Of a stretch of 64,000 bases of DNA, positions 8,699-61,129 are shown one piece after another. The number at the start of each line of letters is the position of its first letter. Position 1 is the first letter of the stretch. Position numbers and translations under genes: made by a program. Source of the DNA: Gracilinanus agilis (Eukaryota); assembly GCF_016433145.1 (NCBI RefSeq), contig NC_058133.1, positions 190,905,882 through 190,969,881 on the forward strand. Reading direction: 5' to 3'. Below the pieces are notes generated by a model. The model searched no databases. It was given only the letters and a program-made list of their open reading frames with translations, and had not been told where the DNA came from.

Positions 8699-8706
8699 CT
8701 TTGAAG
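8699..8706 (+). promoter_or_regulatory. LEF1/TCF site (hair-keratin CTTTGAAG motif)
   Basis: CTTTGAAG ~200 bp upstream of the keratin TATA box, the position known for this motif in hair keratin promoters. Confidence 0.7.
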
Positions 8707-8785
8707 CTAGACACATGAAGCTCTTACTTCACTGACAAAAAGCTCTGGAGAGAGTCCTGACTTAGCAGGAAGCCTAAGTAAAGTC

Positions 8786-8794
8786 TTTTATGAG
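8786..8794 (+). promoter_or_regulatory. Candidate HOXC13-type site TTTTATGAG
   Basis: Matches TT(A/T)ATNRR, ~115 bp upstream of the keratin TATA box. Confidence 0.45.
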
Positions 8795-8907
8795 GTGAGG
8801 GACTTTTTTTGAGGGATGTAAATAACAGGTTGAGGGGAAGGTTGTTTGAAAATTCTGTAGAGTAAAAATAAAGGTGTGGTATCTGTCCACACCCATTTCT
8901 GAGGGGC

Positions 8908-8913
8908 TATAAA
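8908..8913 (+). promoter_or_regulatory. Keratin TATA box
   Basis: TATAAA 99 nt upstream of ATG 9007. Confidence 0.85.
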
Positions 8914-8922
8914 GGCTACTAG

Positions 8923-15194
<6,272 letters not shown>

Positions 15195-40000: not shown

Positions 40001-41235
40001 TTTGCCATAGCAGTTCCCAAAGTCTGTTTTCAGGGATGACACCTTACATACTTTCCTTCATTGAGAAGGCTTCTTAACCCTGACTTTTCTCCACTAACGA
40101 AGGCAGTTGAAGTCTAAAAAGTTGTCATGAATAATATCTGATGTTGGAAAACTGAAAAGAAAACACACCTTCCTTCTCTCCAGAAAGAAGGGAGGGCTAT
40201 GAGTATGGAATGTGGTACATGCGGTTAGATATTGCTATGTGGGGTAGCTTTGTGTGAATTTTTTTCTTTGTTAAAAAGAAGGGTTCATTGTTGGGGTGGT
40301 TTAAGGGGAAAATACTAGTGTAAATGTGAAGGGAGGCAATAAATTTTTTCAAAGTTCAATGCTAAGCACAGTTCTTTGGCTTCTGAAGTGTCTTCCCATT
40401 TCCCATTCTCCCTCGGTTTCTTTTTTTTTTAATTATTAATAACTTTTAGTTTTATAATCACCTAAATTACCTCTTATATGTTCATCTCACCCTCTATAGA
40501 GAGCCATCCTTTATTAACAAGTCTTTGTTTCTCCTCTCATCCCTCTTAATCTCTACTCAAGGCATTGCCGGCTTTAAGCAATGCTTGGAAATCTCAAGTT
40601 GAAACCTGGTGTGACTTCTTGGGGGAGGGGGGTGCCATGCAGGCAAGAATGTCTCACCTAGGCCCATAGCATTTTACGATGAGTCTCTCTTCATTTCACA
40701 GGGGGTGTGTCCATTTCTCACTGATGCTCATCAGTTTGCCTGTTATGCACAGGCACCACATACACACATACACACATGAATTTGCCAGGTGAAAATAACC
40801 TTGTGAAGAAGATGACTGTCTTCCCTGGGAGCAACCAAGTGAAAAGTTCTATTGTCTGGTTCTGTCAGTAGTCTTTCATGGACCAGATGGGTCAGACCAC
40901 TCAACTTTTTGGCTTCTTGGCTACTCTCTGATGGACCAACAGCCCAGAATAACTGGGTTATTATTTTGACTCCTACTTGCTCACCAATGAGAAGGTGGGA
41001 GAGGAGTGTGCCACTGCTGGCTTCACAGACCTCTGACCAACACATGGTTAATGATGGCTGAGGTTTACCTGGTGATGATGATAGGCCTCTTACAAGATGT
41101 ATTTTTATTTCCTGGACAAATAACAGTTGGCGTGAGTCCTAATTTAGCAGCAAACAAAGTGTGGCCCCCCTGTGCCTTCCACATTTTTTTTTTTTTACGA
41201 GTTTAGCTACACTAACCTGGAAAATAAACAGCCAG

Positions 41236-41328
41236 CTAATAAGCCCTTCCTCTGGAAATGGGCATAAATAATAACAAAGAAAACATCCTGTGCTTTATGC
41301 CAACACCCTTTGGGGAGGGAATATAAAA
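41236..41328 (+). promoter_or_regulatory. KRTAP17-1 proximal promoter: CTAAT (41236), 22-mer (41266-41287), TATAAAA (41322-41328)
   Basis: TATA 84 nt before ATG; same module and spacing as KRTAP16-1 and KRTAP29-1. Confidence 0.8.
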
Positions 41329-41405
41329 GCCACAGGCAGGAAGGACCTCATCAGTCTTGGGGAACTCTGGCTTCGTTGCCAACTGAGACCTGACCAGCTG
41401 GGACC

Positions 41406-41738
41406 ATGGGTTGCTGTCCCACGGACTGCTTCAACTGCTGTGGCTGCCAACAAGATCAGTCTGGGGAATGCTGTGAGATGTGCTGTTGCCAACCCAGCTG
41501 CTGCGGGTCCAGTTGCTGTGGCTCCAGCTGCTGTGGGTCCGGCTGTGGTGGCTCTGGCTGTGGTGGCTGTGGAGGAGGTTGCGGCGGCTGTGGCGGTGGC
41601 TGTGGAGGCTGCGGAGGAGGTTGTGGAGGCAGCTGCTGTGGCTGTGGGGGTTGTGGATCCGGTTGCTGTGGCGGGTGCTGTGGGTGCTGCTGTGGGCCAG
41701 TTTGCTGCCAGCCAACACCTGTGTGTGACACCAAATGA
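41406..41738 (+). CDS. KRTAP17-1: Keratin-associated protein 17-1 (Gly/Cys ultra-high-sulfur KAP), single exon, 110 aa
   Basis: N-terminus MGCCPTDCFNCC, CCCQP, Gly-Cys repeats and C-terminus GPVCCQPTPVCDTK match human KRTAP17-1 as recalled (MGCCPGDCFTCC...GPVCCQPTPICDTK); ACCATGG Kozak, TATA upstream, AATAAA downstream. Confidence 0.96.
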   Translation: MGCCPTDCFNCCGCQQDQSGECCEMCCCQPSCCGSSCCGSSCCGSGCGGSGCGGCGGGCGGCGGGCGGCGGGCGGSCCGCGGCGSGCCGGCCGCCCGPVCCQPTPVCDTK

Positions 41739-42170
41739 AGACATCTGGAGGGAATCCAGAGACCTCACCTTCATTTGAAGAACCCAGATGGAGAGAGAGC
41801 CCTCCGTATCCCACCTCCTGCCTAGAACTCCCTTCAGTCCAAAGAGACAGTGGCCTCGCTCCCACTTTCATTGTAGATCCTGCCACATGTACAGTCAGAG
41901 AAGGAATGCAACTCAAATAACCCTATCCAATGATTCAAGGCACCTGGGGGGAGGGCAACCCCACTCTGGTGAGAAATTTAAAAAAAATCTCAAAGAAGGG
42001 ATCCAAAGAAAGAAAAGTAAGGGTCCCTTACCAAGACTTGACTCTCATGAACTTGTTCAATGTCTTGTCATTTCAGGACATCCTTCTTTTCAAGATGTCT
42101 TTGGGATGTCCTTCCTGTCTGTCCTTTCTGCTGCTTCTGAGGTGCAAAGAGGCTTCTTTGCTAATCTTTT

Positions 42171-42176
42171 AATAAA
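42171..42176 (+). terminator. Probable KRTAP17-1 polyadenylation signal
   Basis: AATAAA ~430 nt after stop, followed by T-rich sequence. Confidence 0.65.
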
Positions 42177-42379
42177 TTCAAGCATTCTGACATAATTTGA
42201 TTGGTTTTCTTGGCTCTTCCTTCACTGTATGGGATGGATCTAGGCAAGAAGCATGAAAAGGTGGAGAAAGACATGAATATTCTCTCAAGTGCTTGAGGGA
42301 CAGAGAACATTTGGCCTAAATTTTTTGAGGCAGTGCAATTGAGTCAAGACCATTCTGGTAGAGCCAGGAGGGGAGACTT

Positions 42380-42730
42380 AAATTTAAAAATGTTTTCAAG
42401 ATTACTTGCCAATTAATTACATTACAATTTTTAATATTTGTTTTCTGATATTTTGCAATCCATGATCTCTCCCTCTATCTCCCTCTCCTCAAGAAGGCAC
42501 GTGCTATGATATAAGTTCTACATGTATTATCAGATAATACATATTTCCCCGTTCATCATGTTGTAAAACAAGACATATATTCCTTCACTGGAGAAAAATT
42601 CATGGAGGAAATACGGTGAAGAATGATATGTTTCAATTGCATTCAGACTCCATCTACTCCTTCTATGATGATGCTTAGCCTTTTTCTCATGAGTCCCTTG
42701 GTGTTGTCTTGGGTCCTTGCCTGGATGCCT
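42380..42730 (-). mobile_element. Old L1 3' UTR remnant
   Basis: Antisense L1 3' UTR-type sequence (tgcattcagactccatc..., ccttggtgttgtcttgggtcctt). Confidence 0.6.
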
Positions 42731-44544
42731 TTATTTAGGACAAAGCTGGTTTGAGCTGTAGAGGTTCCAGACTCAAGGCTTTGTGGATCAAGACTGTTCT
42801 AAGATGGTCCTTGACACTCTTATCACTTTCTTCGGATACTTCTCTTTGACCCCTTTGATAATTTCCCCTTAAAGCCAATGTTTAGAATGTTTTCTTGTTC
42901 CATGGATCTGTGGTTTATCCCACTGACTAAAAGCCTAGAGGCAGTTAAAATCGATCATATACAAAGACCAGGGGTGGCCTGATCCTGATAGGTGTGGGGA
43001 CTGAGCCAAATGTAAGAGCCAGAATTCCTCTTTTTTTTTCTTCATTTTTCAAACAAGGAACTTTCAAAAAAGAAATTTAAAGTTGCTGAATGGCAGATTA
43101 AGAGTTGTAAGGGACTTTGAGCTCATCTAGTCCAACTCTCCTTCATTTTACAGATAAAGAGATTGAGGCCCAGAAAATTTAGGTGACTTGCCCAGTGTCA
43201 TATGTGTTAGAAACCACAATTGCCATTTAAGAACCCGGGTCTTCCATTTACATTGTACTATGACGACTCTCCTGTGAACATGACAGCGACACAGTATTGA
43301 ACTGAATCGAACTCGACAAAATCAACTCTTCATTTTCCCTGAGTGGATGGAGATGTGTGCAAGGGTGTCACCAAAATGATATTATCCCATCTCATCACAG
43401 ATAGTACCAAGCACTGTCTATACTGGGGATAAGATCTGAGGTTGTCTGTAACCTTTGTTTCTATACTGCTTTCTGATCTCTTTTTTTAGCTTTGGTGGGG
43501 TTGGGATCTGCTCATATGAAAGCCTGATTCCCAAATTCCCAAGAAATAAGTCAAAGCAAGTTAGAGTTTTTGTGGAATAAGCTGATAAAGGTTTCTCTAT
43601 CAAAGAGTAATAGTGCTTCATTCCTTCATCTCTAGTTGATGGTATTCTTGGCCCCCAGGAAAGGGACTCCCTTTGAAGAATGACAACAAAGTAACCTGTT
43701 GTTACACTGCTATGGTTGGGGGAGCTCCCGAATTGCACATATCCTTTGTGATCCTCTACTGTGCTATAGACACACACAGCTATATATTGTCTTATTTAAG
43801 TAGGCAGAATTAAATAAGAATTTGTTCACCATATAACATTATATTTGATTGGACTACAGGTCAGAAAGCTCACCCCTTTTTATCGTCTCATCCTACCCTT
43901 CTACACACATATTTTTCATTGATGAAAGAAGAAAAGAGGAATTCTGACTTCAATACTTGTGTCATTTCCCAGATATTTCCCAGTTTAAGTCAGGCTTCAC
44001 CTAGTAGGTCTGGGCAGCCTTCAGTCAACAAGTATTTATCATGCACCTACTAGGTAGCATGCATTGTGGTAGGCACTGGAGATATGAGCTCAAAGAATGA
44101 AAGGAACTTCATATACCAGGAGCTTATGTTCTAATAAGAGAGACAAGAAGTACATATAAAAGTAGAGCATGAGAATAAAGTTCATAAATACTAATGTATA
44201 CAAAGTAATTGCATTCATGAAATATATACTTAGTGTTCCCAGGATTCTAGTTAGAGGGATAACATGACACACTCTTTTCCAGTGCTCGAGGTTGGGACAA
44301 GGGAGGAAGCCTTGGGGTGGAAAGCAGAAGATTTTTTCCATTTTGAGTATTCTGACTAATTGCTAAAAATGTCTGCTGAAGATATCGTGCGTGACAAGTG
44401 AAGGGGAGGTAGAAGAAAAGGGAAGAGGGCAACAGATATTTCCGAGGCCATAGAAAACCCTGCAGAATTGAACCAAATGACGGACTAGTTTTCACGAGAG
44501 AAAACTTGACTTTTGCCCTGAAATAAAAATGAACACCTGTTATA

Positions 44545-45170
44545 TTGACTAAAATGATACAAAGGTAAAATGAAAAATGTTGGAGGGAATGTGGGAAAAT
44601 GGGGACACTAATACAGTTTTGGTGGAACTATGAACTGATCTAACCATTTTGAAGAGCAATCTGGAATTATGCCCAAAAGAGTTATAAAACTGAGTATATA
44701 CCTTTTGATCCATTGATACTATTAGGTTTGTTTCCTAAAGGTGATCAGGAAAAAAAGAAGAAAGAACCTATATGTTCTAAAATATTTATAGCAGCAGACT
44801 GTGGCAGAGGTGGCAAAGAGCTGGAAATTGAGGATATACCCATCAATTGGGGAATGGCTCAAAAAGTTATGGCATATGATGATGATGGAATACTACTGTA
44901 GCATAGGAAATGATGAGTAGGTCAATTTTATAAAAATATGAAAAAGCCTACATAAAATTATGAAGCGTGAAACAAGCAGAATGAAGAGAACATCATTCAT
45001 AACAACAGAAATATTATGTATGGCCAGCTCTAAAGAAAGAACTGACAAATAGTTTTCTTTATATGCATGTATCTATGAAATGATGACTTCTCTATTGCAG
45101 GTAGAGGAGCGGGGTAAGGAAATACTTTGGGAACTCCTTTAATGTAACAAATACATTAAAAAAAACACAC
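44545..45170 (+). mobile_element. Old L1 3' end (ORF2 C-terminus remnant)
   Basis: ORF 44713-44901 LLGLFPK...PICSKIFIAA...KELEIEDIPINWG resembles the L1 ORF2 C-terminus. Confidence 0.75.
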
Positions 45171-46099
45171 ATACCATAGTTGCTCACCTTCATATAGTGC
45201 TACAAAACTTGGAGAACACTGACTGTACGTTCTCTTGTCCGATCATTTTACAGATGAGGGACCAAGGTTCAAAGAGTTTAAATGATTTTCTTGGGGTCTC
45301 ACAACTTGGAAGTGCTTTGGGAACAATTAGAACCCAGGTCTTCCTGAAGCCAAGTCCAGTGCTCTATCTACTATGCCATATTGATATATAGAAACTGACT
45401 TCTTCACTGAGGCAGAATACCTGACCTTGGTAGTTAAAAAAAAAGAAAAGAAACACAGAGCTTATTTCTCATTTCACTCCAGATCATTATAGCAGCAAGG
45501 TTAAATTCAGATATGTCTTTGAGATACAAATACCAAGAGAGCACATCTGTGACCTTCACGATGTCTTTTAATCCTAGCTTTTTGCTCCTTTTCGGATTCA
45601 GTTAGAAGCCACTCAGTCTCCCAGGTGGACAAGAAGGAGATGGAATATCTGGAAAATGTTTGAATGAATTGGAGGGAGGTCTTGGCAAGTGATGACTATG
45701 AGCAGGTGAAATGCATGTGCTTGGACCAAACCATGGTAGTTTCAGAACTTTAGTTGTCCTTTAGTGGAGTCAGTTCTGATTGACTTTATGGGAGATCTTG
45801 CTGAGAGGTTGGCTCTGAAATCCCATTTGCTCTTTGGGCCTTAGTTTTCCCATCAGTAAAAGGAAGGATGATTGTAGTAGTTGATCTTTAATGACCCTCT
45901 ACTGCAAATTTAGAGGCTTCTCTATTCAAAATATTCGTACTGACTCTTTGTGTCCCCTCTGTGGTAGAGCCTTCTGAGCTCATATTGGTCTGATCAGTTA
46001 TAGTTGGACACACTGTACATTGACCCTAACATAGGGATGTTATTTTGGTCCTCTTCAAGGATGAAGGACAACAAACACCACATCTTTGAACATACTAAA

Positions 46100-47330
46100 C
46101 CATTTTAAAAAAACCTTACCTTCTCTCTTAGAAGTAATACTAAATATTGCTTCCAAGGCAGAAGAATGGTAAGGGCTAGGCAATGAGGGTTGAATGACTT
46201 GCCCAGGGTCACACATCTAGGAAGTGTCTGAGGCCACATTTAAGCCCAAGACCTCTCACCTCCAGGCCTCTATCCATTGAGCCACCTATCTGTCCTCTAA
46301 TCTGTTGTTAATATTGTATTGATAACTGTTTTTATATCATTGTCATTTCCTACCATACCCTGTCTTCTTTCCTACTGAGTAAGTCATTCTTTGTAACAAA
46401 GAATAGAAAATAATGAAAAGTTTGTTAAAGATAGTCAAAATATGGCTCCAACAATAAAGGGGTTGCTCCACATCCATGAACTTCAAGGAAGGATCTTTAT
46501 TTCTGTTCAATTGTATCTGACTCTTCATGATCCTATGGATCCTACTGTCCATTGGCATTAAAAAATAACCCAACAAAACTGTTACCTTTCATCTTGGGAT
46601 CAATACTGTTACATTGTTCAAGGCTGAAGACTGGCAAGGGATAGGCAGTGGAAGTTAAGCAGCCTGCCCAGGGTCACACAGTTAGAAAATACTTGAGACC
46701 TGATTTGAACCCAGGACCTCTCGTCTCTAGGATTGGCTCTCAATCCACTGAACCACCTAGCTTCCCCCTTGAGGTTTTCTTGTCAAAGGTCCTGGAGTAT
46801 TCTGCCATTTCCTTCTCTAGTAGATTAAGGTAAATAGAAGTTAAGTGACTTGCCCAAGGCTACATAGCTACTATATGAGGCTGGATTCAAACATCCTGTT
46901 CTGCTTCTTTAAGGAAGGTTTTTGTTGTTGTTCAGTCATTAAAGGTGTATCTGACTCTTTGTGACCCCGTTTAGGATTTTCTTGGCAGAAATACTTTAAT
47001 GGTTTGCCATTTTCTTCTTCAGCTTATTTTACAGATGAACAACTGAGGCAAACAGGTCTGAATAACTTGCCCAGGATCACATAGCTAGTAAATGTCTGAG
47101 GCTGGATTCAAATTCATGAGCATAAATCTTTTTTTTTGTTTAAACCCTTACTTTCCCATCTTAGAATCAGTACTTGCCCAAGGTGGGAAGTGTCTGAGGT
47201 CAGATTTGAACCTAGGACCTTCCATCTTTAGGCCTGGATCTCTATCCACTGAGCTACCCAGCTGCTGCCAAGGATAAATCTTCTTGATTCCAAGCCTAGC
47301 TCTCTATCAGTGTGCTTCCTAGCTGCCATG
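46100..47330 (-). mobile_element. Cluster of minus-strand SINEs (MAR1/SINE-1 and MIR types) upstream of KRTAP16-1
   Basis: Repeated gtgacttgcccagggtcacac, atttgaacc and ccactgagc...agctg motifs at ~46100-46295, 46585-46760, 46925-47120 and 47128-47268. Confidence 0.8.
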
Positions 47331-47798
47331 AGGAAGGTTAGGGGAGGCAAATTTTTCTCATTTCTTCTTCTGAGCCCAACTTGAGAACTTATTAAAAGTG
47401 CATTTCATTTGACACAGAAGCCAGGGACTGCTTATTGCCAGACAGACTGTAGTACCAAGGAGCTCAGGTCTATCTATTGAGAATCATAGAGTCATAGCTA
47501 GAAGGGGGTACCGAAGCCATCTAGTCCAACTCCTACATGAAAGTAACCCCCACCTCCCCTGCCGTGAATATAATTAGGGAATTTTGGAAACAGAGAATTT
47601 ATAAAAGTGTTGGAATGTATCATGTTTCTGTGTATATATGTGTAGGCTTAGTAACATCCTGGTTAACCAGCACTAGCCCCACAAAACAAAGAGCCCCATG
47701 AGGATCCCCCAAATCTAAGAAAAACATAAATTTAGGAAGAAAATAAACAGAAACGTTTTAATGAGATGACAAGCAACCCCTTGCAAACAAATAACACT

Positions 47799-47891
47799 CT
47801 AATGAGATGTTTCTGTACAAGCTGACCCAAACAACAACAAGGAAAAGATGTCGTGTCTTGGGGAATCGCTCGTGACTTAGGGGATATAAAA
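47799..47891 (+). promoter_or_regulatory. KRTAP16-1 proximal promoter: CTAAT (47799), 22-mer (47829-47850), TATAAAA (47885-47891)
   Basis: TATA 89 nt before ATG; shared module. Confidence 0.8.
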
Positions 47892-47973
47892 ACTCCAGGG
47901 CACAAGGCAATGCTCAGACTCCAGTAGCTCCCTCCCTGCAGCTTACAGATTTATAGAAAGAAGTAGGTCCAAG

Positions 47974-49236
47974 ATGTCTGGCAGCTGCTGTTCCGGGACT
48001 TGCACCACAGTGCCAGCCATCTCTATCTGCCCAACAGATGTGAGCTGTGGTAGTTCCACCATCTGCCTGACTACTTCCTGCCCAAGTCCAACATGGCAAC
48101 TTATTAGCTGTGAAGACCCATGCAGCACATCTCCAAGCTGTGCCCCGAGTTGCTGTGAATCCTCTTGCTGTGAGCCCACTTGCTGCCAGCCAGTATGCTG
48201 TGAGCCCACTCCTTGTGAATCCTCTTGCTGTGAGCCCAGTTGCTGCGAGCCCATCTGCTCTGTGCCTACTTGTTGCCAACCAGTCTGCTCTGTATCAGCT
48301 TGCTGTCAGCCTGTTTGCTGTGAAACCAGTTCTTGTGTGCCATCTTGCACGGTGCCCACTTGCTGCCAACCTGTCTGCTCTGTGCCTGCTTGTTGTCCAC
48401 CCGTTTGCTCTGAGTCCAGTTGCTGCCAGCCAGCTTCCTGTGTGACACTGGTCTGTGAACCTGTCTGCTACCGTACCATCTGCTGCCTACCCAGTCCCTG
48501 TGAACCAGCCTGCCCAGTCCAAGAGCCTTCCTGTTGCATTCCCAGTGTCTGCCCAACAGCCTGCTATCAATCCACCTCTTGCCAACAGAGCGTCTGCCTG
48601 CCCAGTCCATGCCAGCCATCTTGTTACGTAGTAAAACGCTGCCAGTCAGTTGGCTGTGAACCCATTTCCTGCAAACCAGCTTGTGTGTCTTCCTGCTGCC
48701 AACCACTCTGCTGCCGACCAGGATCTTCGGCTTCTGTCGTCTGCCGGCCAGCTTGCTCTCGACCCACTTTCTACGTGCCCAGTTCCTGTAGGCCACCTTG
48801 CATCGCATCCATTTCCTACCGACCAGCTTGTTACCGTCCCATCTGTTCCTCTCCTCTCGGTTGCAAACAACCGTACTTGACTTCTTTTTCTTATCGTCCA
48901 ACTTGCTACCGCTCACCCTACTCGCTACCCTTTCTGCGCAGGCCAACCTGTGTCACCTCCATTGCTTCTCGGCCGGCATGCTGTCAGCCAGTCTGCTCTG
49001 AGCCTAGTTCCCCATGTAAGCCCACTTGTGAAAAGTCTACTTCTAGCCAGCCAGATGGTTCTGAGTCCACTCCCTGCAAGCAATCTGTCTCAGCGGCTAG
49101 TCCTTGTGAGCCGACAAGCTCCGGGACTGCTCCCTGCACACCCAGCAGCCCAACCACCAGCGAAACAACTGCTGTCAAAGTAGAGGATGGAAAATCATCT
49201 GGCTGCTGTTCCAGAAACTGTAGATCCAGGCATTAG
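47974..49236 (+). CDS. KRTAP16-1: Keratin-associated protein 16-1, single exon, 420 aa
   Basis: MSGSC start, TWQL motif, CCQPVC repeats, CQPSCYVVKRC, PGSSAS, SYRPACYRP segments and Ser/Thr/Pro-rich tail as in human KRTAP16-1 (recalled); position between KRTAP17-1 and KRTAP29-1. Confidence 0.95.
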   Translation: MSGSCCSGTCTTVPAISICPTDVSCGSSTICLTTSCPSPTWQLISCEDPCSTSPSCAPSCCESSCCEPTCCQPVCCEPTPCESSCCEPSCCEPICSVPTCCQPVCSVSACCQPVCCETSSCVPSCTVPTCCQPVCSVPACCPPVCSESSCCQPASCVTLVCEPVCYRTICCLPSPCEPACPVQEPSCCIPSVCPTACYQSTSCQQSVCLPSPCQPSCYVVKRCQSVGCEPISCKPACVSSCCQPLCCRPGSSASVVCRPACSRPTFYVPSSCRPPCIASISYRPACYRPICSSPLGCKQPYLTSFSYRPTCYRSPYSLPFLRRPTCVTSIASRPACCQPVCSEPSSPCKPTCEKSTSSQPDGSESTPCKQSVSAASPCEPTSSGTAPCTPSSPTTSETTAVKVEDGKSSGCCSRNCRSRH

Positions 49237-49606
49237 GAATACAAGACATGGCTATGAAGAAGAAAAACCTCCAACCCCACCAGGTTCAGAGGAGTAGTTA
49301 GTACATGTTTGAACCCCTTTCCATCACTCACTCCACGCTGCTTGTACTACAATAGCTCTATCTGAAATAATTCAACCATAATCTAGGACCGTTAAGATAT
49401 AGACCCACTTAGGCACAGAGAAAATGGCACATAGTATCCTTTTCACAGGCCAATATCACACGATGAAGAGGTGAATGATGCTTCTTGTTTCCTGCTCCAT
49501 CCCCTTTCATTTCAGAAGCTTCTTCCAGTTCTCTCTTGAAACCTGTTTCCTTGTCTTTCTCATCCGTGATATACTTTTAGATGTGAGAAATATTTTCTCA
49601 TCTTCA

Positions 49607-49612
49607 AATAAA
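49607..49612 (+). terminator. Probable KRTAP16-1 polyadenylation signal
   Basis: AATAAA ~370 nt after stop. Confidence 0.6.
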
Positions 49613-50074
49613 ATCAGACAGATGTTACTCTCATTTTTTCAGTCCTTTTTTCAGTTGTGTCCAAATCTTTATGACCCTATTTGGGTTCCCCCCCCCCCAT
49701 TTTTTATTGTCATGCAAAACACACTTCCATATTGTTCATAAGAACAAGGTCATACATAAACTCCAAAATAAAACCAAAGAAAGATATAGTGATGTGAAAG
49801 AAGACTCCAACAGTTCTTATGGATAGCATTCCTATTTGAGGTTTTCTTGGCAAAGATACTAGTTTGCCATTTCCCTCTCCAGCTCATTTTACAGATGAGG
49901 AAATTGAGGCAAACAGGGTGAAGTGATTTGCCCAGAGTCATCCAGTTAGTAAATGTCTGAGGCTGGATTTGAACCCATCTCTTCCTGAAACAAGACTTGG
50001 GAACTCTATCCATTGTACCATCTAGTTGCCTTACTCTCATTACTGATCACTCGCTCTGATGCACTTATCGTTAT

Positions 50075-51400
50075 TTTTTTTACCTTGAATGGGCTTATAT
50101 AAGTGGAAAGGGCAAGGGCTTTGGATAGGACTTTGTACAATAAAATGCTAGTAGAGGGAATAAGGAAGTTCCATTAGGCATGGACTGTAGGAGAATAAAG
50201 ATCAAATATTTCCTTTCCTGGGAAACACTTAACCTCCCTCCCCCCAAACTCCCAACCTTATCTTCTGCCTTAGAATCAATCCCAGGCACCAGATCCAAGG
50301 CAGAAAAGTGGTAAGGATTAAGCTATGGGTGCCCAAGCCGCACAGTTAGGAAGCATCTGAAGCTAGATTTGAGGCGAGGATTTCATGTGTACAGGTTTGG
50401 CTCTCTATCCTCTGAGCCTCCTACCTGCCCTGAAAACATTCTTCATAAGAAGTCCATATATTTATTATTAAGATATAATGATGGGGCCAGCTGGGTGGCT
50501 CAGTGGATGGAGAGCCACGCCTAGAGTTAGGAGGTCCTGGGTTCAAATCTGACAGACATTTCCTAGCTGCGTGACCCTGGGCAAGTCACTTAACCCCCAT
50601 TGCCTAGCTCTTAGGGCTCTTCTGCCTTGGAACCAATACATAATATTGATTCTAAGATGGAAGGTAAAGGTTTTTAGATAAAAACAAAACAAAACACGAT
50701 ATACTGACACAGAGGACAAAGTGCTGGATTTTGAGTTAGGAAGTCCTGGATTCAAATCTTGTCTCATATAATATCTGTATGACAATGGTTGGTCGTACCA
50801 TTCTTTGAGGCTTAGTCTCCTATCTGTTGAATGATGGGGTTGGACTAGATGGATTTCCAGTTCTAAAAGTAGCATTTAATAACAGCTGACATCCATATAG
50901 CACATTATTTGTGGACATTATGTAGCCCAAGCCTCATAAAAATTGTTTTGATATGGGCATGATAGATATGATTACCCCAATTTCCATAGCTAGAGAAACT
51001 CCAGGCTAAAGGAATTAAATGACTTGCTCATGGTCACACAGCTAGGCACTGTTAAAGTCAGGATCTGAACCCGAATTCTCCTGACCCTACATCTAGGAAG
51101 CTGCTATACTGTATTGTTTCTAAGAAGAGCTCTCCCTTTGCCCTAAGGCACATATGCATTATCAAAGCTCTTTCTATGTCTTCAATTCAACTCAAGAAAT
51201 TTTATTAAGGGGCAGCTAAGTGGCTCAGTGGATAGAAAGTCAGGCCTGAAGACAAGGAAGTCCTGTGTTCCAATCTGACCTCACACCCTTCTTAGCTATG
51301 TGACCCTGGGCAAATTGCTTAACCCCAATTGCCTAGCCCTTACCACTCTTCTGCCTTGGAATTGATACTATTCTAAGATGGTAATGGTTAAAAAAATTAT
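50075..51400. mobile_element. SINE cluster (minus ~50075-50410; plus 50483-50695; plus 51209-51400)
   Basis: tRNA-like heads ggggc(c)agct..gtggctcagtgg and aagggc...ccttaccactcttctgcc tails. Confidence 0.8.
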
Positions 51401-52157
51401 TGAATATCTGCTATGAGTAAGGGTTGTGCTATATTCTGGGGATTTAAAGACAGTTTTGAAGTTTACCTTCTCTTGAGACATAGAGTACATAGAGAGAGAA
51501 ATAGTCTTAAGATAATATGGGTGGGAAATAAACATTAAGAACTGGGATCAAGTTCGGTGGTACAGTGGAGAGAGGGCTAGATCTGGCCTTGAGAAGATCC
51601 GAGTTCAAATGTGGCTTCAGACATTTAACTAGTTGTGTAATCTTGGGCAAATCACTTAAACTTCTGTCTGCCTCAGTTTCCACACCTGTAAAATGATGAT
51701 AATAATAGCATCTTCTTGCCACAGTTATTGTGAGAACAGATTGAGAGATTTTTATAGTACTTTGCAAACTTGCTGATGCCGCTTCTATCACTACTATTAT
51801 AGCACCTGAGCTGATTCTTGAAAGGAGTTTTGAGGCAGTGATGAGAAAGAAGGAAAATCCAAGTTTGAGGGAAGCTTGTGGAAAGGCAAGAGACAGCTTA
51901 ACAGTCATGCTTGACTGTGATGATGTAGAGTGTATACAGGGGAAGGATGGGGGAAGTAAGGGTTAAAAGATAGGTTGGGAATACAGAAGTATCTTTTGCA
52001 CAATAATAAAAGTATAATCCAGATCAAATTGCTTACAGTCTCTAAGAGGGGATAGGGAAAAGTGGAAGGGGGAGACAATTTGGATCTTATGATTTCAGAA
52101 AACATATGTAGAAAATTATTACACGCAATTTGGAAAATAAATTTTTTTGGAAAAAAA

Positions 52158-52924
52158 TGTAGGTTAGGAGGGGTGCTGGGAGCCCCCCAGAGGAATGAGG
52201 TACCATCAAGTTAGTGCAGAGTGACACTATCCTACACTGATCCTGTGGCCTGAAAATTGGGCCACAGGATGGGTGCAAAACCTGATCAAACCCCTCTGTG
52301 TGACTCCCTTCTGACCAACACTTATTATTGAAATTATTATAATCTCTATATATCTTTAGGAGAGCCCTAAGCCTTATAGAAATTCCCTTATAGAAATCCC
52401 CTAATTACTCTATAATAAACCAGCATTTAATGAGTTAATCGTTCATACATTCAGTAAAATAGCAGAAGCTGCTTTAATCTCTCTCTCAAAAGTCTGAAGA
52501 ACAGAGCATGGTACATCAAAACAAAACACTCTCTCTTTGTTATTTTCCCACATTGAGCTCAACTCCAAAAATTTTAAAATTCTCACCCTTTTGAAATATG
52601 TTGAAGGTCTGTTATCAAAAATAATAATTGGATAAAATAAGGTCTTGGTAACCTTGCATACTGTTTAGACCAAGTATAATCTACATGAGAAAAAAATGTG
52701 TCCTATATGCCAACTCTTATGTAACTCTCCTAGCCTTGAATTCTAGACTGTTTTGATTTCAAATGTACTTTGTTGAAAAAACTGGTCTTGAAGAAAAATA
52801 AACACAAGCTCAGGGGCTGGTAGATCAGATCAGCTTCCATAACTCCACTGTGTCTCTGACTCTTTTTCGGCTAAACTGTCACACCTCTCAGAATATCTGG
52901 AGCTGCCGGGGCAAGTCCCCGGCA
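52158..52924 (+). mobile_element. Solo ERV LTR, 767 bp
   Basis: TG...CA termini; TATAATAAA at 52411; AATAAA at 52797-52802; terminal hairpin TGCCGGGG-caagt-CCCCGGCA. Confidence 0.7.
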
Positions 52925-53335
52925 GGGGGGCAACTAGGTGGCTCAGTGGTTTGAGAACTGGGCCTAGAGATGGGAAGTCTCGGGTTCTAAGTTATTCTTA
53001 AGATACTTAGAAGCTGTTTGACCCTGGGCAAGTAACTTAGCTCCCATTGCCTAGCCCTTACCACTCTTCTGCCTTGGAAACAATTCTCAGTATTGATTCT
53101 AAGCAGAAGATACGAGTTTAAAATAAAAAAAGATAAGGGGGCAGCTAAGTGGTTTAGTGGATTGAGAGCCAGGCCCAGAGATGGGAGGTCCTGGGTTCAA
53201 ATCTCTCCTCAGACATTTCCTAGATGTGTGACCCTGGGCACTTGACCCCCATTGCCTAGTCCTTACCACTCTTCTACCTTGGAACCAGTACACAATATTG
53301 ATTCCAAGAGGGAAGGTAAGGGTTTAAAAACAAAC
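52925..53335 (+). mobile_element. Two tandem marsupial tRNA SINEs (52925-53132, 53137-53335)
   Basis: Two heads (ggggcaactaggtggctcagtgg; ggggcagctaagtggtttagtgg), each with an A-rich tail. Confidence 0.85.
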
Positions 53336-54029
53336 AAAGAACAAATCAATCAATTATTAATTAATAAAGATAGGTTAGTCATTGTAGAAGGCTTTACATG
53401 TTGGAGGGGAGAATTTATATTTTATCCTAGAGGCAATAGAAACAACAGAAAACTATCAATTGCATGAAAATCTAGAAATATATGGGGTACCCTTAGTATT
53501 CTACCCATTTTATAGATGGGGAAACTGTAGCTCAGAAAGATTAAGATAGGAAAAGGGGAATATAAATTGCAAAAGCTATTGCATACTGTTGGTTGGCACA
53601 GGCACCTGAGTTTGTCACCATTTCTTCTCCATGGCAATGTGATTGGCTAATCTTATCTTACTTGGTGTGGAAACTGTGATAAGGATCCAGGTAACTTTCC
53701 TGTGAAGGAGAGGGTTTAAGAGATTAACAAAATTTATTTACTACATTGACACCTAAGAAGAAGGCAAGAAGAATGTTTAAAGGAAATGAGGGTCAGAATA
53801 CCAATAGAAGGAATCCTTGGATAATATGTTGATTGCTCTTAGTCCACAGCAAATCACAGCTTCTCCCTCCTTAAAAATCAGAGAATGTCAGTAAGAAGAA
53901 AGATGAGAATACGGCAATGCTAGGAAATATGGATCTGCATCTGACATCATAGAGGATTGTAGCATTTAAGGGTGAAAGAGCTTTCATTCAATTGCCTTAT
54001 ATGGAGGAAGAAGCCAAAGACCAGATAAG

Positions 54030-54470
54030 GGAAGGTCACAGGGGGAACAATCCAATATTCAAACCCAGATTCTTTCCTCTGCTTCCAGACCTCATGCTTA
54101 CATCTATTACTCCAGGACAGATGCTATAGCTCTTCTCACTATGAATGCCTCTTATTAAAAAATGAAATACCGGGCAGATTAATTTTGGAAAGACCTTTGA
54201 AATTAGGAAGAACAAAACAAGCAGAACTAAGAGAACATTATACACAGGGTCAGAATTACTGTTTTAAGAATGACCTATGTATGTCCACCTCCAGAGAAAG
54301 AATTGATAAGTAGAAATAAATAAGACAATTCATACATAAAAATATTTTTGTCAAATGATGCCTTCTCTAATGGGGGGAGTGAGGGAGTTAGTTAACTAGG
54401 TATTTAAATGTAACAAATAAATATATAAATAAATTTAAAAGAAAAAACAATTTTAAGAAACATAAAAAAT
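54030..54470 (+). mobile_element. Old L1 3' UTR remnant
   Basis: tggaaagacctttgaaattagg...aaacaagcagaactaagagaacattatacaca. Confidence 0.65.
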
Positions 54471-55619
54471 GAAATATTAAATGCCAACTATGTGCCAGGT
54501 ACAGATCTAAGCACTTTACAAACTCATTTGATCCTCACCATAATCTTGGGAGGCAGGTATTATTATTATTATTATGCATTTTACAGATTGTGTAACTGAG
54601 GAAGAAAGTTAAGTGACTTGCCCAGGGTCACCCAGCTCATAAGTATTTGAGGCTGGATTTGAATTCAGATCTTCCTGACTCCAGGCCTATTGCTCTAGCC
54701 ACTGTGCTACTTGGTTGTGTCAAGGGATGAGGTCTTTTTAAACAGGGTATCCTTGAGCAGGAGAGTTAGGCTCTGGAAGGGGGAGTCAATTGGAGGAGAA
54801 TTGAACCATCACACACACACACACACACCAAAATGTTCACTCCTATTTTTCCTGATTAACTTGCTTATTTCTGTTGCCTTTGAGCATGAGTGGGCATTGG
54901 CCAGGTGATTCTAAAACTTCAAAATCCTAACTGAAAGAGTTCATCCAGGTCTAAGGAGGCAGTGGTCCCACTGTGCCCTAGTAAGACCATACCTGGAGTC
55001 CTCCACTCAGCTTTAGTTGTCACATTCTAGGAGGGGCACTGGAAAGTTTAATGGGTGCCCAGAGGAATAAGACCAGATTCATGAAAGATCCTGAGGTTAT
55101 GGCTACTAAATGTGAGTTGAAAGAACTGGGAATGGAGATCCTAAGAAAGGGAAGACTTTGGAGTATGGTAAAAGTCTCCCAAGAATTTGAGTGACCACAG
55201 CTAGATGGTGCCAGGGCTGGAGGTCAGGAAGATCTAAGTTCAAAATAGGACTCAGACATTTGTTATACGTGTGATCCTAGGCAAGTTCCTTAACCCCGTC
55301 TGCCTCAGTTTCATCTTTAAATTGAAATGGAGAAGGAAATGGCAAAGCAGTCTTAAAAATACACCAAATGAGGTCACAAAGAGTCAGGCACAACCAAATG
55401 ACTGAATAACAACTACTAATATGAAATTGAGATTAAATTTGTTCTGTTGGCCTCTAGAGAATAGAATTAGGAGTAGTGGTCAGATTGATAGTGGTATAGA
55501 GATGCAAAATTATTCTCAGGGTAAGGAGGAGTTTTCAAGTGCAGATGCTATACTTGGCAGAGTAGAAATCATATGGTGTGTTCAGGAATAGCAGCTTGTG
55601 TCTGAATTCTGCCTAAACC

Positions 55620-56640
55620 ATTTGGTTTTTTTATGGTCATGTAAAACATACTTCCATATTGTTCATTGTTGTAAAAGCAAAGTCATACAAAACCAAAATC
55701 CCAAAATAAAATCGGGGATACACTGATGTGAAAGATGACTCCAACAGTTCTTTCTGTGGAAATGGATAACATTCCCTGTCATAAGTCTTTCAGGATTGTC
55801 TCAGATCACTGCATTGCTGAGAGGAGCCAAGTTTTCACAGATAATTATTGTCTAACATTGCTATTATTGTGTACATTGTTCTCCTGGTTCTGCTTATTTC
55901 ACTCTGCATCAGTTCTTGCAGATCTTTCCAGCTTTTTCTGAAATTACGTTGCTTATCATTTCTTATAGCACAATATTATTCCATCACCAATATGTACCAT
56001 AATTTGTTCAGCCATTCCCCAATTGATGGACATCCCCTCCATTTCCAATTCTTTGCCACCACAGAAAAGAGCAGCTATAAATATTTTTGTTATTTTTTTT
56101 AACTTTCTTTGGGATACAGACCCATTAGTGTCAACCATTTGTTTGCTCCATATGCGACCCTGGACAAGTCACATAACCTCTCTGTCAGTTTCCTTATCTG
56201 TAGAATGAGGTTATCATAGTACCCATATTACAGTTCTTATGAGAATCAAATCAATGACTTATATACAGGGCTTTGTAAATTTTTTATAAAAAATTAATTT
56301 TATTCAGTCCCTCTTTTTTCTCCCCCTACTACAGAAGGCATTATCCAGCAAAATCTATGGATTATATATCTTATTCCACCTTCTCAGTTTATTCTCTGGA
56401 GGTGAACATCCATAAGTTATTCTCCAAATATGTCTGTAGCTGTATACAATGTTCTAATTCTACTTGTTTCATTCATTATTTCATGTGGTTCTTTCCAAGT
56501 ATTTTAAAAATTAATCTGCTCATCATTTCTTATGGAACAGTAGTATTCCATTTTCATTATATACCAGGTTTAGTCATTCCCCAGTTGATGGATATCCTCT
56601 CAATTTCCAGATCTTTGCCACTATAAAGAGAGCTGCTATG
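55620..56640 (-). mobile_element. Old L1 3' ends (two fragments)
   Basis: ORF 55956-56138(-) KIFIAALFCGGKELEMEGMSINWG resembles the L1 ORF2 C-terminus. Confidence 0.75.
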
Positions 56641-56924
56641 TGCTTTGTAAATCTTTAAGTACAGTGTAAATGCAAAGAGTGCAATTCTGAAGGGCTGGCC
56701 ACATAGTCCAAATGGCAAATACATATTTGCCTATAAAGGCAAACATGCAGAGATCAGAAGAAGTGATACAAGGACACTTTCAAGGTCTCTCTGAAGCATT
56801 TTTAGTATCAGCTGTGAGACATGGAAGATGCTGGCACAGGAACGCTTATGCATAACAAGGAATTTGCTATGCTCTATGAGCAAAGCAGATGCACAGAAGA
56901 AACGTGAGATTCAACAGTCTAGAG

Positions 56925-57128
56925 CAGTGATGGGCAAACTTTTTAAGGAGGGGGCCAAAGGAAAGGAAATGCACATCTGTCAGTCTGTTTCTAAGGCAAC
57001 TCTTTAGAAGTTTCATTGTATTATATCCTACTCTTTGTATTCGTCAGATTAGGAATAATGTTGCACAGCCCGATAGAACATTTCAGGGGGCCACATCTGG
57101 CCCACCAGCCATAGTTTGCCCATAACTG
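56925..57128. mobile_element. hAT MITE, 204 bp, perfect 8-bp TSD
   Basis: TIRs CAGTGATGGGCAAACT / AGTTTGCCCATAACTG; TSD GTCTAGAG on both sides (56917-56924, 57129-57136). Confidence 0.92.
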
Positions 57129-57843
57129 GTCTAGAGACATCTCTATCCCAAATGTCCAAATGTTCTAGTTGTGTCTGATATGTAATAGAGTGTTCCAAGC
57201 TCATATTGGACTGACCAGCCACAGGTGGACATGCTGTATCTTGACCCCAAAATTGGAAAGTCTTTGAAAACAAAGGATGAAAACGACAAGTAATAGCCAT
57301 TGGAGTAATCTTAGAGTGGATATGGAGAGGTGGTTTTCCATTTCACTGAAGGTCTTTGAGCAAAGGATCAATGACCCTTTTACTCTGGGTATGCCACACA
57401 AGAGATTCTCATTTAGGTATTGGTTGGGATAGATGACACCAGAGTGTCATCGAATACTGAAATACTATGACTGTGGGAACTGAAAGGGTCCTGGAAAAAG
57501 AAGAATTTTCATTTCCTTTGGGATCTCATTAGGTCTATCCTGATTTCTTCCTGACTCTGGGCATATGGGCCAGTACTTTGCTTCAACGCAGCATCAGTGG
57601 TTGATGGCAAACATTCCAAGCAGAAGAAGGGAGTGCCACATACTTAGGTATGAGTGGAGGTGCAGCCTGATGAGAGGTTAGCTCAACTTCTCTTCCTTCC
57701 AGGTGGGGCTAAGGAACTCGGCCCCAAGTGGGACAGCTGAGTTTGAGGGCTAGCGTAGTCTGATCCCAATTTAACTGAGAAGGCTCCAAACCCACCTGAC
57801 GAGTTTTAAGTGGGGCCAACACCTCTGAGGCCAATGAAGCCTA

Positions 57844-57937
57844 CTAATCAGATGTTTTTATGTACATGAAACTAAACAATAACAAGGAAAAGATGCTCAA
57901 GCTCGTGCCCATATGAAATGAGGATAAGACTATAAAA
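57844..57937 (+). promoter_or_regulatory. KRTAP29-1 proximal promoter: CTAAT (57844), 22-mer (57874-57895), TATAAAA (57931-57937)
   Basis: TATA 87 nt before ATG; shared module. Confidence 0.8.
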
Positions 57938-58017
57938 GCCACAAGATATAAAGAATTGTAGACACAGCTCAATTCACTTCTTGAATCAATTTAGCCACCA
58001 ACAAAACTCCTAACACC

Positions 58018-60915: not shown

Positions 60916-61129
60916 NNNNNNNNNNNNNNNNNNNNNNNNNNNNNNNNNNNNNNNNNNNNNNNNNNNNNNNNNNNNNNNNNNNNNNNNNNNNNNNNNNNNN
61001 NNNNNNNNNNNNNNNNNNNNNNNNNNNNNNNNNNNNNNNNNNNNNNNNNNNNNNNNNNNNNNNNNNNNNNNNNNNNNNNNNNNNNNNNNNNNNNNNNNNN
61101 NNNNNNNNNNNNNNNNNNNNNNNNNNNNA
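60916..61129. other. Assembly gap (214 N)
   Basis: Run of N. Confidence 1.

What the first reader, a model, noticed from the sequence alone, without database searches (positions are those of the whole stretch)
41236..57937. Rigidly spaced three-part promoter module shared by KRTAP17-1, KRTAP16-1 and KRTAP29-1
Seen in sequence: each KRTAP gene has CTAAT exactly 30 nt before the start of a 22-mer (41236/41266, 47799/47829, 57844/57874). The 22-mers are aaataataacaaagaaaacatc (KRTAP17-1), aaacaacaacaaggaaaagatg (KRTAP16-1) and aaacaataacaaggaaaagatg (KRTAP29-1): 21/22 identical between 16-1 and 29-1, and 18/22 between 17-1 and 29-1. TATAAAA follows after 34, 34 and 35 nt, and the ATG lies 84, 89 and 87 nt from the TATA start. 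Spacer sequences differ while their lengths are fixed. The equivalent position in the keratin promoter (8852-8873) has no such motif. Established: TAAT is a homeodomain core, and AAACAA/AACAAT/ACAAAG resemble forkhead and SOX/HMG cores; KAP17-1 is reported as hair-cuticle expressed. Inference: this is a composite, spacing-constrained element co-regulating a KAP sub-battery (possibly cuticle-specific). It also points to a common promoter ancestry, even though the KRTAP17-1 protein is not alignable to the other two. I am not aware of this module being described.
Basis: partly seen in the sequence, partly recalled or inferred. Interest (0 to 1): 0.75.

Follow-up and report, generated by a model that had tools for sequence, protein, structure and literature searches.

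The report
Conserved hair keratin-associated gene promoter
Three hair-protein genes (KRTAP17-1, 16-1, 29-1) share a real, evolutionarily conserved stretch of promoter with nearly fixed spacing, but it is the common promoter design of high-sulfur hair-protein genes in general, not a private switch for these three.

Summary
CTAAT, a 22-mer 30 nt later and TATAAAA 34-35 nt after that lie upstream of all three KRTAP ORFs and nowhere else in the window.

It is not chance. The same layout stands in the orthologous promoters of bat, porcupine, guinea pig, tenrec, gray whale and an unnamed Logan contig. A profile built only from those eutherian promoters finds exactly the three window promoters (E 1e-18 to 3e-10).

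- The three blocks are part of a longer conserved proximal promoter of about 200-250 bp. It also holds a HOX13-type TTTAYGRG at -128, ATAAACA, and a CAACACCC box at about -20.
- The "spacers" carry gene-specific conserved sequence.
- The first spacer is rigid: 30 nt in 11/11 KRTAP17/29 promoters. The second is not: 42-56 nt.
- KRTAP10-like genes inside TSPEAR in a fruit bat and the dugong carry the same design, so this is not a three-gene or cuticle sub-battery.

Most likely this is the ancestral high-sulfur KRTAP promoter, copied by tandem duplication and kept by selection. The homeodomain sites are HOXC13-type; the factor at the central block is unknown. I found no description of it in the searchable literature. 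Read-based evidence for the transcription start was not obtained.

The parts
41138..41148 (+). KRTAP17-1 far-upstream block CCTAATTTAGC. Its counterpart is TCCAAATTTAGC in eutherian KRTAP16/29 promoters.
41153..41159 (-). AACAAAG, which is CTTTGTT on the minus strand. It matches the LEF1/HK1 consensus and lies 169 bp upstream of TATA.
   Evidence: consensus and usual position from PMC11475705
41194..41201 (+). TTTACGAG, a HOX13-type block at -128 from TATA. TTTAYGRG stands at -126 to -128 in 7/7 KRTAP17 and KRTAP16 promoters.
41224..41230 (+). ATAAACA, a forkhead-type core at -98. It is conserved in the window, whale and porcupine KRTAP17-1 promoters.
41236..41243 (+). The general form is STAATNAG, a 7/8 match to the published HOXC13 site TT(A/T)ATNPuPu.
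   Evidence: consensus from PMC6107959
41266..41287 (+). KRTAP17-1 central 22-mer AAATAATAACAAAGAAAACATC. It contains AACAAAG (LEF/SOX core) at 41273-41279.
41299..41308 (+). GCCAACACCC, a CACCC-type box about 20 nt upstream of TATA. It is shared with whale KRTAP17, eutherian KRTAP29 and, as GACAACAC, with KRTAP10-like promoters.
41322..41328 (+). TATAAAA of KRTAP17-1
41406..41738 (+). KRTAP17-1 ORF (110 aa, 35% Cys). It is 75-83% identical to the whale and porcupine KRTAP17-1 proteins.
47743..47749 (+). ATAAACA, a forkhead-type core at -142 of KRTAP16-1. It stands at -142 to -144 in 4/4 KRTAP16 promoters.
47758..47765 (+). TTAATGAG at -127, an 8/8 match to the HOXC13 consensus TT(A/T)ATNPuPu.
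47799..47806 (+). CTAATGAG, block 1 of KRTAP16-1
47829..47850 (+). KRTAP16-1 central 22-mer AAACAACAACAAGGAAAAGATG. Its first 16 nt are identical to the central block of a dugong KRTAP10-like promoter.
47885..47891 (+). TATAAAA of KRTAP16-1
47974..49236 (+). KRTAP16-1 ORF (420 aa; Pfam Keratin_B2_2)
57765..57775 (+). CCCAATTTAAC, the far-upstream block of KRTAP29-1
57844..57851 (+). CTAATCAG, block 1 of KRTAP29-1. It overlaps an E-box CAGATG at 57849-57854. CTAATCAGRTG is kept in five of the six eutherian KRTAP29 promoters; guinea pig has CTAATCAGAGG and tenrec CTAATCAAATG.
57874..57895 (+). KRTAP29-1 central 22-mer AAACAATAACAAGGAAAAGATG
57931..57937 (+). TATAAAA of KRTAP29-1
58018..59076 (+). 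KRTAP29-1 ORF (352 aa; Pfam Keratin_B2_2 and PMG)

Best explanation
The three blocks are the best-kept parts of one ancestral TATA-containing proximal promoter of high-sulfur keratin-associated protein genes, about 200-250 bp long.

Tandem duplication copied this promoter together with the coding region. The cysteine-rich coding repeats then diverged until they could no longer be aligned. Purifying selection kept a series of factor-binding blocks and their order.

The order, in distances from the TATA start, is:
- TCCAAATTTAGC, about -160 to -185
- ATAAACA
- TTTAYGRG, -128
- STAATNAG, -86
- an A/C-rich block ending in CAA(A/G)G(A/G)AA, -56 to -42
- CAACAC(CC), about -20
- TATAAAAGC

Inferred, not shown: the two homeodomain-type blocks are HOXC13-type sites. 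In KRTAP17-1 the central block is a LEF/TCF or SOX (HMG-box) site. In KRTAP16, 29 and 10 the central block ends in a GGAA core and its factor is unknown. The CACCC-type box is a KLF/Sp site.

The factors would assemble side by side on this short platform next to TFIID and switch the genes on in the differentiating hair shaft. The gene-specific sequence between the shared blocks would tune where and when each gene is on. Examples are the E-box and the octamer ATGCAAAT in KRTAP29, and TTCCTCTG/TGGAA in KRTAP16 and 17.
For: - Exact sites and counts in the window.
- The layout is kept in orthologues whose proteins are only 44-61% (KRTAP29, 16) or 75-83% (KRTAP17) identical to the window's.
- Within 2.5 kb upstream of each gene, only the proximal stretch from about -40 to -400 aligns between the window and eutherians.
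- A profile of 11 eutherian promoters hits the window only at the three promoters (E 1.5e-18, 3.2e-12, 3e-10); the next hit is the hair keratin promoter (E 0.017).
- A profile of 6 KRTAP10-like promoters has the same three promoters as its top three window hits (E 0.0045, 0.019, 2.1).
- [CGA]TAATNAG-N70-82-TATAAA occurs 14 times in 267 kb, always directly upstream of a KRTAP ORF on the coding strand. Dinucleotide shuffles give 0.37 +/- 0.56.
- STAAT to the central block is 30 nt in 11/11 KRTAP17 and KRTAP29 promoters.
- TTTAYGRG stands at -126 to -128 in 7/7 KRTAP17 and KRTAP16 promoters.
- Published consensus sites: HOXC13 TT(A/T)ATNPuPu (PMC6107959); LEF1/HK1 CTTTG(A/T)(A/T) (PMC11475705).
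- HOXC13 is reported to regulate keratin and KAP genes (PMC11919099).
Against: - No binding, chromatin or reporter data were available, so the factor assignments rest on consensus matching only.
- The central block of KRTAP16, 29 and 10 (CCTTGTT on the minus strand) does not fit the LEF1 consensus.
- Eutherian KRTAP16 has lost the AACAAYAAC half and reads GCAATGAGGAAAAGA.
- Some promoters lack a block: the third Pteropus KRTAP10-like gene and a dugong one have no TAAT, and guinea pig KRTAP29 has lost the CACCC region.
- Only four KRTAP families were sampled. Families 1-5, 9 and 12 and the glycine-tyrosine families could not be reached.
Confidence: 0.75

Rival explanations
1. One reading: a private three-part, spacing-constrained element that co-regulates only KRTAP17-1, 16-1 and 29-1, possibly as a cuticle-specific sub-battery.
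For: The three genes are neighbours and share the element. KRTAP16-1 and 29-1 of the window are nearly identical in block 1 and the 22-mer.
Against: KRTAP10-like genes inside TSPEAR in Pteropus and the dugong carry STAATNAG, AAACAACAACAAGGAA, GACAACAC and TATAAAAGCC in the same order, with 87-88 nt between TAAT and TATA. Their profile hits the window's KRTAP16-1 promoter over nearly its whole length. A review reports that KAP16 was not detected in human follicles and that KRTAP17-1 is expressed unlike its domain (PMC4929423).
Confidence: 0.08
2. The similarity is a neutral leftover of recent duplication, or is kept by gene conversion between neighbouring paralogues, with no selection on the blocks.
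For: The 22-mers of the window's KRTAP16-1 and 29-1 differ at one base. Eutherian KRTAP16 has a clearly different central block. A conversion event in the window's lineage is therefore possible for that one block.
Against: - Each gene's own variant is kept across species: AATAATAACAAAG in KRTAP17 of the window, whale and porcupine; CTAATCAGRTG and AACAATAACAAGG in most KRTAP29 promoters; TAATAAGATGTTCCTCTG in eutherian KRTAP16.
- Sequence between the blocks is near random between paralogues (7/34 in spacer 2 for 16-1 vs 29-1).
- DNA farther upstream does not align at all between species.
- The dugong KRTAP10-like block equals the window's KRTAP16 block over 16 nt. This points to an ancestral state, not local conversion.
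Confidence: 0.05
3. The central 22-mer is a Wnt-responsive LEF1/TCF site in all these genes, that is, a proximal copy of the known HK1 motif.
For: KRTAP17-1 has AACAAAG (= CTTTGTT) in the 22-mer in the window, whale and porcupine. LEF1 sites are a known feature of hair keratin and KAP promoters (PMC11475705; PMC10052683).
Against: KRTAP16, 29 and 10 read ACAAGG or GAGG at that place, which breaks the CTTTG core. The position, 42-56 nt from TATA, is far from the 180-250 bp reported for HK1. Separate AACAAAG sites at -169 (KRTAP17-1) and -200 (KRTAP16-1) fit HK1 better.
Confidence: 0.12

Closest known systems
HK1 / LEF1 motif of hair keratin and KAP promoters, CTTTG(A/T)(A/T) (PMC11475705)
   Same: It is a short conserved motif shared by many hair-specific structural genes upstream of a TATA box. 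KRTAP17-1's 22-mer contains a perfect match on the minus strand. The keratin gene in this window has CTTTGAAG 209 bp upstream of its TATA.
   Different: HK1 is a single motif usually 180-250 bp upstream of TATA. Here the element is a multi-block array within 130-190 bp, and its central block in KRTAP16, 29 and 10 does not fit the LEF1 core.
HOXC13 binding sites in hair keratin and Krtap promoters, TT(A/T)ATNPuPu (Jave-Suarez 2002 and Pruett 2004, as cited in PMC6107959 and PMC11919099)
   Same: STAATNAG matches 7 of 8 positions. The -128 block matches 8 of 8 in several promoters (TTAATGAG, TTTATGAG, TTTATGGG). HOXC13 is a reported regulator of KAP genes.
   Different: The published sites are scattered TAAT/TTAT cores. 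A fixed pair about 42 nt apart at set distances from TATA, conserved across KRTAP families, is not mentioned in any paper I could read. Binding was not tested here.
Family-specific conserved promoter motifs of sheep KAP genes (Powell, Nesci and Rogers 1991; Powell and Rogers 1997; Jenkins and Powell 1994). Their content is recalled from memory; the texts were not readable here.
   Same: The idea is the same: KAP gene families carry conserved short motifs in their proximal promoters.
   Different: I could not check whether any of those motifs equals the blocks seen here, so prior description in that older literature cannot be excluded.
Enhanceosome-type composite elements with fixed spacing, such as the interferon-beta enhancer (general knowledge)
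   Same: Several different factor sites are packed on about 100 bp next to a TATA box, with order and part of the spacing conserved over long evolutionary time.
   Different: Only the first spacer is strictly fixed and the second varies by up to about 14 nt. No cooperative binding or spacing sensitivity has been shown.

Membership tests
Conserved proximal promoter inherited by paralogues of a tandem gene family | Lies directly upstream of a TATA box and an ORF, in the same orientation, at every copy | tested here: met
   All 14 regex hits in 267 kb lie upstream of KRTAP ORFs on the coding strand. TATA lies 75-121 nt before the ATG.
Conserved proximal promoter inherited by paralogues of a tandem gene family | Conserved in orthologues while the surrounding non-coding DNA is not | tested here: met
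   blastn of 2.5 kb upstream aligns only about -40 to -400. The eutherian profile hits the window at E 1e-18 to 3e-10.
Conserved proximal promoter inherited by paralogues of a tandem gene family | Promoters of different paralogue families are detectably homologous | tested here: met
   The top three window hits of the KRTAP10-like promoter profile are the three promoters; KRTAP16-1 is matched over profile positions 18-118 at E 0.0045. Shared blocks are seen.
HK1 / LEF1 motif | Core CTTTG(A/T)(A/T) on either strand | tested here: not met
   The 22-mer meets it in KRTAP17-1 only (AACAAAG). KRTAP16-1 and 29-1 read AACAAGG.
HK1 / LEF1 motif | Located about 180-250 bp upstream of TATA | tested here: not met
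   The core in the 22-mer lies 46-49 bp from TATA. Separate upstream AACAAAG sites at -169 (KRTAP17-1) and -200 (KRTAP16-1) fit better.
HOXC13 target site | Sequence TT(A/T)ATNPuPu | tested here: inconclusive
   Block 1 matches 7/8, with C, G or A in place of the first T. The -128 block matches 8/8 in the window's KRTAP16-1, eutherian KRTAP16 and whale KRTAP17. It reads TTTACGAG in the window's and porcupine's KRTAP17.
HOXC13 target site | Bound and regulated by HOXC13 | not testable with these tools
   This needs a gel shift, ChIP or CUT&RUN, and a reporter with HOXC13.
Spacing-constrained composite element (enhanceosome-like) | Invariant distances between blocks across orthologues and paralogues | tested here: inconclusive
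   - STAAT to central block: 30 nt in 11/11 KRTAP17/29, 29 nt in 3 eutherian KRTAP16, shorter in KRTAP10-like promoters.
- Central anchor to TATA: 42-56 nt.
- STAAT to TATA: 81-88 nt in 16/20; outliers 74 and 94.

Spacing-constrained composite element (enhanceosome-like) | Activity lost on half-turn insertions between blocks | not testable with these tools
   This is a reporter experiment.
TATA-box core promoter | Transcription starts about 30 nt downstream of the TATA box | not tested
No listed run is on record as RNA.

The most novel reading that the evidence does not exclude
A single stereospecific promoter grammar governs hair-shaft expression of all high-sulfur KRTAP genes in both chromosomal clusters. 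Its layout is two HOX13-type sites about 42 nt apart, a central HMG/GGAA block 39 nt further on, a CACCC-type box and TATA. It has been kept since before the window's lineage split from eutherians. The homeodomain-site-to-TATA distance (about 86 nt) is itself under selection: where the central block sits 3-7 nt closer to TAAT (porcupine KRTAP17, KRTAP10-like genes), the second spacer is longer by a similar amount.
Probability: 0.25. Interest if true: 0.55.

Novelty: new member of a known kind. Interest (0 to 1): 0.4.

Why it matters
KRTAP genes form one of the largest mammalian structural gene families, yet their transcriptional control is poorly described. The known pieces are scattered LEF1 and HOXC13 sites.

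A compact, deeply conserved promoter design shared by at least four KRTAP families would offer three things:
- a concrete set of blocks to mutate
- a bait for identifying the unknown factor at the central block
- a template for small hair-shaft-specific promoters

It also shows regulatory DNA outliving all detectable protein similarity between duplicated genes. It is not a surprise in kind, because conserved proximal promoters in tandem gene families are common.

Tried and rejected
- **Reads.** I therefore have no expression or start-site evidence. Local scripts did read the whole window file as a search target.
- **KRTAP17-1 relatives.** The word search and the exhaustive HMMER search each found only gray whale KRTAP17-1. 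Other ultra-high-sulfur families could not be reached that way.
- **KRTAP16-1 relatives.** The word search gave 4 hits. Two of them turned out useful only because they lie in the TSPEAR/KRTAP10 region.
- **Missing DNA.** The Rhynchocyon locus came back without DNA.
- **Literature.** The motif strings matched only unrelated primers. The body text of MacKinnon 1990 is not held, and Powell 1983 is not held.
- **Rejected readings.**
  - LEF1 as the common factor at the central block, because the core is broken in KRTAP16, 29 and 10.
  - A three-gene sub-battery.
  - Chance.
  - A repeat or transposon origin, because there are no other copies in the window.
- **Species.** The window's organism was not identified. 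Its KRTAP29-1 is 44-53% identical to every eutherian sampled, while most eutherian pairs are 52-77% identical (lowest 47%, guinea pig vs tenrec). This suggests an outgroup such as a marsupial but does not prove it.
- **Human sequence.** L009 is an unnamed Logan contig whose protein is closest to the bat and whale proteins.

Full report
**Observation.**
- CTAAT is at 41236, 47799 and 57844.
- The 22-mers start 30 nt later, at 41266, 47829 and 57874.
- TATAAAA is at 41322, 47885 and 57931.
- The ATGs of three cysteine-rich ORFs lie 84, 89 and 87 nt after the TATA start.

The composite pattern, and the 22-mer alone with up to three mismatches, match only these three places on both strands of the window. 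Pairwise identity is 17-21/22 in the 22-mer, 11-13/25 in spacer 1 and 7-16/34 in spacer 2. The 420-aa and 352-aa products carry Pfam Keratin_B2_2. The 110-aa product matches no family. Its only detectable relative is gray whale KRTAP17-1.

**Conservation in orthologues.** The window's KRTAP29-1 found eutherian KRTAP29-1 proteins at 38-48% identity. I fetched their loci:
- bat Hipposideros (L001)
- porcupine (L002, L005)
- tenrec (L003)
- guinea pig (L004)
- gray whale (L007)
- an unnamed Logan contig (L009)

Each KRTAP29, KRTAP16 and KRTAP17 gene there has the same layout.
- KRTAP29 reads CTAATCAGRTG, then N, then (A/G)AACAATAACAAGGAAAGATG, with one A fewer than in the window.
- KRTAP17 reads STAATGAG, then N, then AATAATAACAAAG.
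- Eutherian KRTAP16 reads (A/G)TAATAAGATGTTCCTCTG, then N, then GCAATGAGGAAAAGA, so it has lost the AACAAYAAC half.

In 2.5 kb upstream of each gene, only the proximal stretch from about -40 to -400 aligns between the window and eutherians. A profile built from the 11 eutherian promoters (-110 to +12 around TATA) hits the window at 41216-41332 (E 1.5e-18), 57828-57941 (3.2e-12) and 47798-47891 (3e-10). Nothing else scores below E 0.01. The element is therefore real, and it is conserved over a distance at which the KRTAP29 and KRTAP16 proteins are about half identical.

**More than three parts.** The alignments show further shared blocks.
- TTTAYGRG stands at -126 to -128 from TATA in all seven KRTAP17 and KRTAP16 promoters. 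The window has TTTACGAG at 41194 and TTAATGAG at 47758.
- ATAAACA stands at -98 in 3/3 KRTAP17 and at -142 to -144 in 4/4 KRTAP16 promoters.
- TCCAAATTTAGC lies near -160 in KRTAP16 and KRTAP29. The window's KRTAP17-1 has CCTAATTTAGC at 41138.
- (G)CCAACACCC lies about 20 nt before TATA in the window's and whale's KRTAP17 and in most eutherian KRTAP29 promoters. In the window it is at 41299-41308.

The "spacers" are also conserved within each orthologue group. KRTAP29 has an E-box next to TAAT, and in three eutherians (bat, porcupine, L009) an octamer ATGCAAAT. KRTAP16 and 17 share TTCCTCTG and TGGAA. They are gene-specific regulatory sequence, not inert linkers.

**Not a private sub-battery.** Two hits of the KRTAP16-1 search lie in the TSPEAR gene region of Pteropus alecto (L006) and the dugong (L008). 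The genes there encode Keratin_B2_2 proteins. By position inside TSPEAR and by N-terminal sequence they are KRTAP10-like; that naming rests on my recollection of the human locus.

Their promoters read CTAATGAG, GTAATAAG or CTAATTAG, then an A/C-rich block ending in CAAGGAAGGGG, then GGGACAACAC, then TATAAAAGCC. In one dugong gene the block AAACAACAACAAGGAA is identical over 16 nt to the window's KRTAP16-1 22-mer. TAAT to TATA is 87, 87 and 88 nt in three of these promoters and 94 nt in a fourth. Two others lack a TAAT.

A profile of these six promoters has the window's three KRTAP promoters as its three best window hits. KRTAP16-1 is matched nearly end to end at E 0.0045, KRTAP17-1 over the CACCC-TATA part at E 0.019, and KRTAP29-1 not significantly at E 2.1.

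The regex [CGA]TAATNAG-N70-82-TATAAA gives 14 hits in 267 kb of window plus loci. All are KRTAP promoters on the coding strand. Shuffles give 0.37 +/- 0.56.

**Spacing.** STAAT to the start of the central block is 30 nt in all 11 KRTAP17 and KRTAP29 promoters and 29 nt in the three eutherian KRTAP16 promoters. The distance from the central anchor CAA(A/G)G to TATA varies: 42-48 nt in KRTAP16, 17 and 29, and 51-56 nt in KRTAP10-like genes. TAAT to TATA is 81-88 nt in 16 of 20 promoters. Guinea pig KRTAP29 has 74 nt and has lost the CACCC region.

Porcupine KRTAP17 has a 3-nt insertion inside the 22-mer and 3 nt fewer downstream, so its total stays at 86 nt. KRTAP10-like promoters have a shorter first gap and a longer second gap. 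This hints that the total distance is what is held, but the cases are too few to say. "Rigid" is therefore right for the first spacer and too strong for the second.

**Mechanism (inferred).**
- STAATNAG fits 7 of 8 positions of the published HOXC13 site TT(A/T)ATNPuPu. The -128 block fits all 8 in several promoters (PMC6107959). HOXC13 is reported to regulate keratin and KAP genes (PMC11919099).
- The central block of KRTAP17-1 contains AACAAAG, the LEF1/HK1 core (PMC11475705). In KRTAP16, 29 and 10 that core is broken, and the conserved part is CAAGGAA(A/G), a GGAA-type core whose factor I cannot name.
- ATAAACA fits the forkhead core RYAAAYA, and CAACACCC fits a KLF/Sp-type CACCC box. Both assignments rest on general knowledge.

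My reading is a compact platform on which these factors sit next to TFIID in differentiating hair-shaft cells. It was inherited by all high-sulfur KRTAP genes through tandem duplication and kept by selection.

**What is known.** The searchable literature describes:
- the HK1/LEF1 motif 180-250 bp upstream of TATA
- HOXC13 sites
- cooperative LEF1, Sp1, AP2-like and NF1-like binding on a hair keratin promoter (PMC10052683)
- promoter deletion work on sheep KRTAP3-3 and KRTAP11-1 (PMC4839604)

None of the ten searches showed this module, and the motif strings matched only unrelated primers. Older subscription papers from the Adelaide group reported family-specific KAP promoter motifs, but I could not read them. 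Prior description of single blocks cannot be excluded.

A review states that KAP16 was not detected in human follicles and that KRTAP17-1 departs from the expression pattern of its domain (PMC4929423). That argues against simple co-regulation of the three genes.

**Limits.**
No letters of that stretch were sent to any search afterwards; local scripts read the whole window only as a target.
- Only KRTAP families 10, 16, 17 and 29 were sampled.
- The window's organism is unknown.

**Verdict.** The feature is real and conserved, and it is correctly placed as a promoter element. It is best described as the shared proximal promoter design of high-sulfur KRTAP genes, not as a three-gene module. It is a new, useful instance of a familiar kind of thing, of moderate interest.

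Noticed in passing
window 8699-8918: The type I hair keratin gene (ATG at 9007) has CTTTGAAG, the classic HK1/LEF1 motif, at 8699-8706. That is 209 bp upstream of its TATAAAG at 8908. It also has a CACACCC box about 20 nt before TATA. The KRTAP promoter profile hits this CACCC-TATA part (8870-8918, E 0.017).
   Followed up: partly
window 47759-47768 and 47800-47809: TAATGAGATG occurs twice in the KRTAP16-1 promoter, 41 nt apart. The two HOX-type blocks are near-copies of each other in this gene only.
   Followed up: no
window 41184-41196: A run of 13 T stands directly before the TTTACGAG block of KRTAP17-1. Whale and porcupine have only 4-6 T there, so this is a lineage-specific expansion inside a conserved promoter.
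   Followed up: no
window 57947-57953: A second TATA-like TATAAAG lies 16 nt downstream of the conserved TATAAAA of KRTAP29-1. It is absent from the eutherian orthologues.
   Followed up: no
L007 9829-10210 and 18144-19234 (gray whale): A nearly hairless species keeps well-conserved KRTAP17 and KRTAP29 promoters. Its KRTAP17 ORF is only 69 aa, and no intact KRTAP16 ORF lies between the two genes.
   Followed up: partly
L004 about 9830-9910 (guinea pig KRTAP29): This promoter has lost about 10 nt, including the CACCC-type box, so TAAT to TATA is 74 nt. The 30-nt first spacer is intact.
   Followed up: partly
L001 9852-9859, L005 18151-18158, L009 (eutherian KRTAP29 spacer 1): A perfect octamer ATGCAAAT lies between TAAT and the central block in the bat, the porcupine and the Logan contig. 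The window has ATGTACAT at the same place.
   Followed up: no
It lies in the KRTAP17-1 to KRTAP16-1 intergenic DNA, outside the finding, and was left alone.
   Followed up: no
window 27256-27420 and 60916-61128: Two runs of N. They were not touched.
   Followed up: no
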